NCBI RefSeq assembly: GCF_052425735.1
Contig: NC_135758.1
Location: 48,360,001 to 48,424,000 of the forward strand
Length of the DNA: 64,000 nt
Reading direction: 5' to 3'
From: Oculina patagonica
Taxonomy: Eukaryota
Each line of letters starts with the position of its first letter. The stretch's first letter is position 1. The notes beneath the pieces were generated by a model. That model did no database searches. It had not been told where the DNA came from and saw only the letters and a list, made by a program, of their open reading frames with translations. A program made the translations under genes and the position numbers. Positions 7,367 to 8,106 of this stretch are shown one piece after another.

Positions 7367-8106
7367 TTAACCACTGAAGCCGTATTTCGACGAGAACGGA
7401 TGCAAGGACATGTTCGAATAGACGACTTGAAGGTTTGAAGAAGGTCTAAAACTGGGTATTACATTATAAAAGTGTGGAAATTGGTGCAATTGAGTGTTTA
7501 TCTCCCCGCAGCACGGGAAACCAGTCTGAAAGTGACTAAACATAGTGTTCATTTCTTCCCACCGCAGAGTTGCTTCAAAGTCCGGCGCCATTTGTTTTTT
7601 CCACTTGGTTCGCCGATTCTGGAACCATGTTTTGACTTGTGTGTCTGTGAGATTAAGGCCCTTTGCCAAATTGTTTCTTTCCGTGATGGTTAGATATTTC
7701 TTGTCGTGAAACTTTTCCTCCAAAGACTTTAACTGACTGCTGGTAAACGCAGTCCTCCTTCTGCGAATCTTGTTGATGTAAAGGTTTTCACGGCTCGGGG
7801 ATCCTGTTTCATCTTCTTCGCTTGGACTTTCGTTCAATAGATCATCTGCATCTTCTTTCTCCAATGTGCAGTTTTCTTTGTTATCTGAAATAAAAAACGC
7901 AATTTCCCAGATTTAGCGTTAATTCCTCCTCTGAGATTCTTACACTAAGAGGACTTTACTTATGACAATGTAAAAATGCACTAACCTATCCCAGCTGCCC
8001 CTTCTCCTTTTAACGCATGAAGCACATTTTGTGCTTCCAAGCGAGTTGGGTCTTTATGCATTGGCTCAGAGTTCCCCAAAATGGCATCAATGCTAAACGA
8101 AGCCAT
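7367..8106 (-). CDS. NKL/ANTP homeobox protein, cluster gene 1 (eh1 + BarH/Tlx-like homeodomain), ~212 aa
   Basis: Exon 1 8106-7986 ([11 protein letters not shown]...), GT-AG phase-1 intron 7985-7885, exon 2 7884-7367 in frame with [58 protein letters not shown]. Confidence 0.93.

What the first reader, a model, noticed from the sequence alone, without database searches (positions are those of the whole stretch)
7405..7470. Unrecognised C-terminal motif '[19 protein letters not shown]' in five of the six homeoproteins
Seen: g1 [22 protein letters not shown]; g2 [20 protein letters not shown]; g3 [22 protein letters not shown]; g5 [20 protein letters not shown]; g6 [14 protein letters not shown]. 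It is kept at a variable distance from the homeodomain in otherwise divergent tails. A second block, APDFExSLRW-like, directly follows helix 3 in g1, g2, g3 and g5. I do not recognise either from known NKL families. Inference: a family-defining cofactor, dimerisation or degron motif.
Basis: partly seen in the sequence, partly recalled or inferred. Interest (0 to 1): 0.7.

Follow-up and report, generated by a model that had tools for sequence, protein, structure and literature searches.

The report
Conserved tail peptide of coral homeoproteins
Five neighbouring coral homeobox genes share a short, undescribed peptide near the protein's end that corals, sea anemones and soft corals have kept unchanged; it is most likely a docking site for a partner protein, which makes it a real but modest novelty.

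Summary
Five of the six two-exon NK-like homeobox genes in the window (g1, g2, g3, g5, g6) encode [14 protein letters not shown]-[YH]-P-[YF] or a close variant 36-75 residues after the homeodomain. The g1 string lies at 7403-7468 (-), 2 nt from the stated coordinates.

The window matches Oculina patagonica. The motif is kept in stony corals, sea anemones (Nematostella, Actinia, Exaiptasia) and an octocoral (Dendronephthya). N and L are invariant, and paralogues differ mostly by synonymous codons.

A profile of the tail alone, run against 1.84 billion proteins, found only this family. Pfam recognises only the homeodomain. AlphaFold2 leaves the motif disordered. Transcript contigs show that g1 is spliced and expressed.

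g4 lacks the motif because it belongs to a separate, older sister group. The second block (APDFExSLRW) is this family's version of the acidic helical extension that follows the homeodomain in many NK-like proteins. It is therefore not new in kind.

Best reading: a family-defining short linear motif, probably a cofactor-docking peptide that works alongside the N-terminal EH1 repressor motif. The partner is unknown. It is a new variant of a known kind, of moderate interest.

The parts
7553..7588 (-). g1 post-homeodomain block [12 protein letters not shown] (predicted helix in the g2 model)
7589..7768 (-). g1 homeodomain (60 aa; K19/E30, T47, F49)
7367..7884 (-). g1 exon 2 (homeodomain, tail and stop codon); the 3'UTR continues to at least 6600
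   Evidence: transcript contigs in 4 runs
7885..7985 (-). g1 intron, 101 nt, GT..AG on the minus strand, phase 1
   Evidence: joint 7884/7986 in 4 runs
7986..8106 (-). g1 exon 1 coding part; EH1 motif [11 protein letters not shown] at 8071-8106
16998..17042 (-). g2 motif [15 protein letters not shown]
16968..17458 (-). g2 exon 2 (homeodomain 17196-17375, block [12 protein letters not shown] 17160-17195); exon 1 is 17613-17730 with the EH1 motif
   Evidence: the model reproduces public protein P0022 exactly
22870..22914 (-). g3 motif [15 protein letters not shown]
22831..23354 (-). g3 exon 2 (homeodomain 23044-23223, block [12 protein letters not shown] 23008-23043); exon 1 is 23501-23618 with the EH1-like [12 protein letters not shown]
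   Evidence: the model reproduces P0084
37693..37737 (+). g5 motif [15 protein letters not shown] (Y replaced by K)
37280..37761 (+). g5 exon 2 (homeodomain 37375-37554, block [12 protein letters not shown] 37555-37590); exon 1 is 37032-37155 with the EH1 motif
   Evidence: the splice reproduces P0055
45457..45501 (-). g6 motif [15 protein letters not shown]
45433..45938 (-). g6 exon 2 (homeodomain 45658-45837); exon 1 is 46027-46141 with EH1 [11 protein letters not shown]. The splice is inferred from the best GT/AG consensus only.
32032..32379 (+). g4 homeodomain and tail. g4 belongs to the sister orthology group, has no motif and carries its own conserved tail. Its EH1-like exon starts near 31623.

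Best explanation
g1, g2, g3, g5 and g6 are tandem paralogues of an unnamed NK-like homeobox family so far seen only in Anthozoa. Each protein is about 200 residues long. It has an EH1 (Groucho-binding type) motif at the very N-terminus and an acidic linker, then the homeodomain and a short acidic helix directly after it. A disordered tail follows, ending with the peptide P-[ST]-S-N-L-Q-[VIL]-[VM]-Y-S-N-M-S-L-[YH]-P-[YF]. This peptide is a short linear motif kept by purifying selection on the protein since before hexacorals and octocorals split. Most likely it is a docking peptide that forms a beta strand when it binds a nuclear partner, a co-regulator. It would tune the repressor activity that EH1 provides, in the manner of the NK2-specific domain, the Hmx-specific domains or Msx MH6. 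Shown here: its existence, conservation, restriction to the family, predicted disorder, and expression and splicing of g1. Inferred: that it binds a protein, and which one.
For: The motif is present in 5 genes of the window and in about 105 of 120 homologues, including Nematostella, Actinia, Exaiptasia, Acropora, Porites, Pocillopora, Stylophora and Orbicella and the octocoral Dendronephthya. N and L are invariant, and the polar S, Q and N are 87-91% conserved, at a variable distance from the homeodomain. Synonymous codon differences dominate between paralogues. The tail-only profile finds only this family in 1.84 billion representatives. In the window's own genome only these genes score as family members. 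Pfam finds only the homeodomain. AlphaFold2 with 50 homologues gives pLDDT below 55 and no secondary structure over the motif, with no docking onto the homeodomain, and predicts a helix at residues 129-145 for the first block. g1 mRNA is spliced and includes the tail. The run V-V-Y / V-M-Y flanked by Ser and Asn is strongly beta-prone (read from the sequence). By established knowledge, comparable family-specific peptides C-terminal to NK-like homeodomains act in cofactor and repression control (Msx MH5/MH6 in PMC2655272).
Against: No partner is known and none was tested. No similarity to any characterised binding motif reaches significance. The g5 clade replaces the Tyr by Q, K or P and shortens the distal part, so not all positions are essential. 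Disorder prediction is also compatible with a degron or a localisation signal.
Confidence: 0.55

Rival explanations
1. The motif is a diverged copy of the ancestral NK 'specific domain' (NK2-SD VPVLVRD, Hmx-SD VPILYRD). On this reading it is not a new motif but an old one in disguise.
For: It occupies the same slot, a short hydrophobic beta-prone peptide at variable distance C-terminal to the homeodomain. The coral's own Hmx has RVPILYRD and its Nk2 has VAVPVLVRDGEPC. Q-V-V-Y-S-N can be laid on P-I-L-Y-R-D with Tyr matched. The first block also resembles the Hmx and Nk6 'AAEME' extension.
Against: The Pro and the Arg-Asp that define those domains are absent, and the invariant residues here (S-N-L-Q) have no counterpart. 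The exhaustive tail-profile search hit no Hmx or NK2 protein. hhalign against the two sister families aligns only the first block.
Confidence: 0.15
2. The motif is a self-association element: the beta-prone core pairs with the same strand of a second molecule, giving homo- or heterodimers among the paralogues.
For: L-Q-V-V-Y-S resembles, from memory, the strongly strand-forming tau hexapeptide VQIVYK. The co-clustered paralogues all keep the same strand.
Against: There is no positive evidence; the dimer prediction gave no verdict and is not counted either way. Nematostella may have only one such gene, so heterodimerisation cannot be the ancestral role. The invariant polar N and Q fit a specific partner better.
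Confidence: 0.1
3. The motif is a degron or other stability signal read near the C-terminus.
For: It always lies within 9-24 residues of the C-terminus. Actiniarian proteins end exactly at ...NMSLYPY. Stony-coral g1 and g2 clades end in Gly (...GFSG), as some C-end degrons do.
Against: The distance to the end and the terminal residues are not conserved, whereas the internal S-N-L-Q-V-V-Y-S-N core is. No match to a known degron class was seen.
Confidence: 0.1
4. The motif is a nuclear export or localisation signal.
For: [10 protein letters not shown] loosely fits the hydrophobic export pattern with x3-x2-x1 spacing (pattern recalled from memory).
Against: The most conserved residues are polar (S, N, Q, N). 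The second hydrophobic position, Tyr, is Q, K or P in the whole g5 clade.
Confidence: 0.07
5. The conservation is at the nucleotide level (an RNA or DNA element overlapping the coding end), not in the peptide.
For: None beyond the position near the 3' end of the coding sequence.
Against: 4-7 of the 12 core codons differ synonymously between paralogues while the peptide stays the same.
Confidence: 0.02

Closest known systems
NK2-specific domain (NK2-SD) and Hmx-specific domains (SD1/SD2)
   Same: Each is a short conserved peptide found only in one NK-like family. It lies C-terminal to the homeodomain at variable distance, is hydrophobic and beta-prone, and occurs in proteins that also carry an N-terminal EH1/TN repressor motif. 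SD1-like 'AAEME' directly after the homeodomain parallels the first block here.
   Different: The consensus differs: there is no Pro-x-L-x-Arg-Asp, and the invariant residues here are S-N-L-Q. There is no statistical similarity. The range is restricted to Anthozoa.
Msx homology domains MH5 (post-homeodomain repression block) and MH6 (C-terminal PIAS-binding block), PMC2655272
   Same: The architecture is the same: EH1, homeodomain, an acidic block contiguous with the homeodomain, then a conserved block at the C-terminus. The coral Msx tail ends ...PQVFHNFMYH, a faint echo of [11 protein letters not shown].
   Different: Msx is a separate locus in the same genome (L017) with a different homeodomain and a Pbx motif that this family lacks. 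The similarity of the C-terminal blocks is not significant, and PIAS binding is untested here.
EH1 / Groucho-binding motif and the hexapeptide / PBX motif
   Same: These are the classic short linear cofactor motifs of ANTP-class homeoproteins. This family has a canonical EH1 at its N-terminus.
   Different: The C-terminal motif fits neither FxIxxIL nor YPWM. It has no Trp, and it lies C-terminal to the homeodomain.
Anthozoan-specific 'ANTP-group-c' of Law et al. 2023 (PMC10598428)
   Same: It is an anthozoan-only ANTP-class group expanded by tandem duplication.
   Different: No sequences are held, so identity with this family could not be tested. That paper mentions no motif.

Membership tests
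ANTP-class, NK-like homeobox genes | Homeodomain matching PF00046 | tested here: met
   E 1e-21 to 1e-23 for all six genes
ANTP-class, NK-like homeobox genes | Positive residue 19 and negative residue 30 (NK-like polarity, criterion of bioRxiv 10.1101/2023.03.14.532566) | tested here: met
   K19 and E30 read from the homeodomain sequences (criterion)
ANTP-class, NK-like homeobox genes | N-terminal EH1 motif | tested here: met
   MASF[ST]I[DN]AILG at the start of g1, g2, g5 and g6, and [12 protein letters not shown] in g3
NK1 (slouch/ceh-1) | Orthology to the genome's bona fide NK1 homeodomain (RRARTAFTYEQLVALENKF..., Ile47) | tested here: not met
   A separate NK1 locus, L009, exists on another contig without the motif. 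It falls outside the starred family clade. The family has Thr47.
Tlx | Thr47 homeodomain plus a hexapeptide (PBX motif) upstream | tested here: not met
   Thr47 and Phe49 are present, but there is no Trp-containing hexapeptide between EH1 and the homeodomain. Automatic names are inconsistent (BarH, MSX-2, TLX1, NK1, vex1, ceh-9, pnx).
BarH/Barx | Tyr49 (WYQNRR) in helix 3 (from knowledge of the family) | tested here: not met
   All six genes have WFQNRR.
Msx | Msx-type homeodomain, Pbx motif (MH2) and MH5 EAELEKLK | tested here: not met
   The coral's Msx is a separate locus, L017, with HEAELEKLKLASKP. It lies outside the family clade.
NK2-SD / Hmx-SD type motif | Core V-P-[VI]-L-[VY]-R-D | tested here: not met
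   The motif has no Pro or Arg-Asp. No NK2 or Hmx protein was hit by the tail profile.
Any described protein domain for the tail | Match to a Pfam model over the tail | tested here: not met
   Only homeodomain-related models pass their cut-offs; nothing matches the tail. Exact-string search of 8.4 million papers found nothing.
ANTP-group-c (Law et al. 2023) | Placement in that clade of their homeodomain tree | not testable with these tools
   No supplementary sequences are held.

The most novel reading that the evidence does not exclude
The peptide is the docking site for a cofactor interaction not yet known for homeodomain proteins. It would be a third kind of ANTP cofactor motif beside EH1-Groucho and hexapeptide-PBX, invented in the anthozoan stem lineage and held almost unchanged for over half a billion years.
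Probability: 0.2. Interest if true: 0.55.

Novelty: new variant of a known kind. Interest (0 to 1): 0.35.

Why it matters
Family-specific peptides next to homeodomains often decide whether a factor represses or activates, and with whom it works. Few are known for cnidarian-only families. This motif gives a clean diagnostic for an unnamed anthozoan NK-like family whose automatic names are contradictory. It also offers a small, mutable handle for testing that family's function in Nematostella: deleting 17 codons. It does not change how homeobox evolution is understood.

Tried and rejected
The dimer prediction on two copies of the g1 tail scored 0.03 against a mark of 0.32. This is no verdict and is not used as evidence either way.

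Protein-atlas look-alikes of the Nematostella tail scored 0.77-0.80, at chance level. They were tails of other homeoproteins or OAR fragments and serve as a lead only. The whole-protein look-up gave only generic NK-like names.

Exact-string search of the paper library for the motif and for homeodomain fragments found no papers.

The supplements of PMC10719294 and PMC10598428 gave no sequence or name that identifies the Nematostella member.

The look-up of encoding contigs gave only sample accessions for the unnamed clades (ERZ26695794, SRR23916682), so their taxa stay unknown. The Nematostella motif gene is not on record there, so its distance to the g4-type gene could not be measured.

hhalign of the tail against the g4-type tail found nothing.

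PDB sequence search only ranked generic homeodomains: En, Gbx1, Barhl2.

I considered a Groucho WRPW/Y-like reading of the terminal LYPY. I rejected it because that part is the least conserved and is not terminal in corals. I also considered a PY-NLS reading, but the spacing and basic residues do not fit.

Full report
**What is in the window.** The window (GC 36.9%, two N runs at 20343-20539 and 21336-21486, left untouched) carries six homeodomain exons: g1 to g3 and g6 on the minus strand, g4 and g5 on the plus strand. Pfam recognises only the homeodomain in each. Each gene has a short upstream exon that begins with an EH1-type motif: MASF[ST]I[DN]AILG in g1, g2, g5 and g6, and [12 protein letters not shown] in g3. 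g4 has an EH1-like NFTIAALLG. The spliced models of g2 and g3 reproduce public proteins annotated in Oculina patagonica exactly, and that of g5 from the public model's internal start onward (P0022, P0084, P0055), so the window is from that coral or a near-identical one. It is G000:C1:48360001-48424000.

**Check of the observation.** All five quoted peptides are there. The 22-residue g1 string is encoded at 7403-7468 (-); the stated 7405-7470 is 2 nt off. The motif cores and the block after helix 3 are listed under 'parts'.

The signal is far beyond chance:
- In 69 distinct motif strings from homologues, N is 100%, L 99%, the preceding S 91%, Q 90% and the second N 87% conserved. The spacer from the homeodomain ranges from 36 to 75 residues and cannot be aligned between clades.
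- Between the window's paralogues, 4-7 of the 12 core codons differ synonymously and 0-6 non-synonymously. Selection therefore acts on the peptide. The similarity is not due to a nucleotide element or to recent gene conversion.

**Is the gene real and expressed?** Contigs from four public runs, from four studies and three organism labels, join 7884 to 7986. They skip 101 nt with GT..AG on the minus strand, and run from about 8274 down to 6600. These are spliced g1 transcripts. The g1 coding sequence is 8106-7986 plus 7884-7367, giving 212 residues with the motif 7 residues... strictly, 19 residues before the stop after the NLQ start. The run from a related species shows substitutions on both sides of the motif core but none within 7400-7444. 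That is too few sites to weigh.

**Distribution.** A search with g1 exon 2 returned 424 relatives. About 105 of the 120 listed carry the motif.
- Stony corals: Orbicella, Porites, Acropora, Pocillopora, Stylophora, Oculina.
- Sea anemones: Nematostella 'ceh-9 isoform X2', which ends ...[17 protein letters not shown], plus two Actinia genes and Exaiptasia.
- Octocorals: the divergent clade with ...PTSNLQVTYSNMPLYPY includes a Dendronephthya protein.

The motif therefore predates the hexacoral/octocoral split. I built a profile from 44 tails with the homeodomain removed (A1). I ran it exhaustively against 1.84 billion representative proteins. It gave 35 hits at E up to 0.001. Thirty-two are members or fragments of this family. 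Three are long Thr/Ala-rich bacterial repeat proteins matched over 24-42 residues, which I read as compositional noise. No bilaterian or named medusozoan protein appeared. Two motif-bearing clades have no taxon label.

**Within this genome.** Only the window's genes score as family members: 286-209 bits for the five and 134 bits for g4, against 123 bits for the next locus. The coral's bona fide NK1, Hmx, Msx, Gbx, Nk6 and Nk2 genes lie elsewhere and have other tails.

**Why g4 lacks the motif.** g4 is not a decayed copy. It belongs to a separate and very slowly evolving orthology group. It is 97% identical to Desmophyllum, 93% to Stylophora, and has a Nematostella orthologue called 'barH-like 1'. 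Its conserved tail is different ([15 protein letters not shown]...[19 protein letters not shown]). In a homeodomain-plus-flank tree, the motif family and the g4 group together form one well-supported clade (97/88). That tree has 84 columns, so many forks are open. Within the clade:
- g1, g2, g3 and g5 come from duplications inside stony corals and are sister to the sea-anemone clade.
- g6-type genes sit unresolved near the octocoral sequences.

'Five of six' is thus explained by an old split, and the motif does define one of the two lineages.

**Structure.** AlphaFold2 on the g2 protein with 50 homologues is confident only for the homeodomain. It adds a fourth helix at residues 129-145, which is the [12 protein letters not shown] block (pLDDT 56-80). 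Over the C-terminal motif it gives pLDDT below 55 with no secondary structure and no packing against the homeodomain. This is the signature of a short linear motif in a disordered tail, not of a folded domain.

**The second block.** Directly after the homeodomain, the sister family on contig C7 has IAAEMEFSMR. hhalign lays this on MAPDFEA[ST]LRW in the same register (P 0.013 over 13 columns, which is weak). The coral's Hmx (LAAEMEAASL), Nk6 (HAAEMGAKK) and Msx (HEAELEKLKL) carry the same kind of acidic extension. In Msx it is the MH5 repression block (PMC2655272). The block is therefore this family's version of a widespread NK-like feature, not a new element.

**What the C-terminal motif most likely does.** The following points are shown:
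- It is a peptide under long-term purifying selection.
- It is family-specific.
- It is predicted to be disordered.
- It lies near but not at a fixed distance from the C-terminus.
- Its invariant residues are polar (S-N-L-Q ... N), around a beta-prone V-V-Y or V-M-Y core.
- It occurs in small proteins whose only other conserved non-homeodomain element is an N-terminal EH1.

From this I infer that it is a docking peptide for a nuclear partner. It probably binds by strand addition, and it probably modulates the Groucho-type repression that EH1 motifs mediate in NK-like proteins (established knowledge). I put this at about 0.55.

The rivals are listed in their own section: a diverged NK 'specific domain' (0.15), self-association (0.10), a degron (0.10), an export signal (0.07) and a nucleotide-level element (0.02). 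The g5 clade has relaxed the Tyr and the distal part. Those positions are therefore not all required.

**Comparison with what is known.** The homeodomain is NK-like: K19/E30, Thr47, Phe49 (criterion). Automatic names are contradictory: BarH-like, MSX-2-like, TLX1-like, NK1, vex1-like, ceh-9, ceh-1-like, pnx. Tests for membership of NK1, Tlx, BarH and Msx each fail on a defining feature, as set out in the membership table. The family works like other NK-like repressors that carry a family-specific C-terminal peptide, but it is not a member of any named bilaterian family that I could test. An 'anthozoan-specific ANTP-group-c' has been reported (PMC10598428). No sequences are held, so identity with this family is open. 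No paper in the library contains the motif string.

**Verdict.** This is a real, deeply conserved, apparently undescribed motif that defines an unnamed anthozoan NK-like family. In kind it is familiar, since many homeobox families have such peptides, so I rate it a new variant of a known kind with interest 0.35. Read laying was given 2001 letters.

Noticed in passing
window 31623-32379 (+), g4: g4 belongs to a separate, extremely conserved orthology group (97% identical to Desmophyllum, with a Nematostella 'barH-like 1' orthologue). Its tail is different: [15 protein letters not shown], a CHC, a proline run and [10 protein letters not shown].
   Followed up: partly
window 37032-37155 (+), g5 exon 1: The public model of g5 (P0055) starts at an internal Met and omits the EH1 start [11 protein letters not shown] encoded from 37032. 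The same splice site gives a 201-residue protein.
   Followed up: partly
window 6600-8274 (-), g1; 45433-46141 (-), g6: No identical public protein came back for g1 or g6, so they may be missing from the public annotation. Even so, g1 is spliced and transcribed in four runs, with a 3'UTR of at least 770 nt.
   Followed up: partly
L008 and L011 (G000:C7, about 26.48-26.52 Mb): The sister NK-like family (auto-named MSH-D-like or pnx-like) has a conserved Cys/His-rich tail, HHCNQHCHPG...PVFCxPQLSYP. This might be a metal-binding element.
   Followed up: no
C-termini of homologues: Stony-coral g1 and g2 clade proteins end in ...GF[ST]G, whereas sea-anemone members stop exactly after ...NMSLYPY.
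   Followed up: no
window 7596-7639: Transcript contigs of other genes overlap only the most conserved homeodomain stretch at 90-95% likeness. This shows that paralogous homeobox genes are transcribed in the same samples.
   Followed up: no
window 20343-20539 and 21336-21486: Two N runs lie between g2 and g3. They were left as they are.
   Followed up: no
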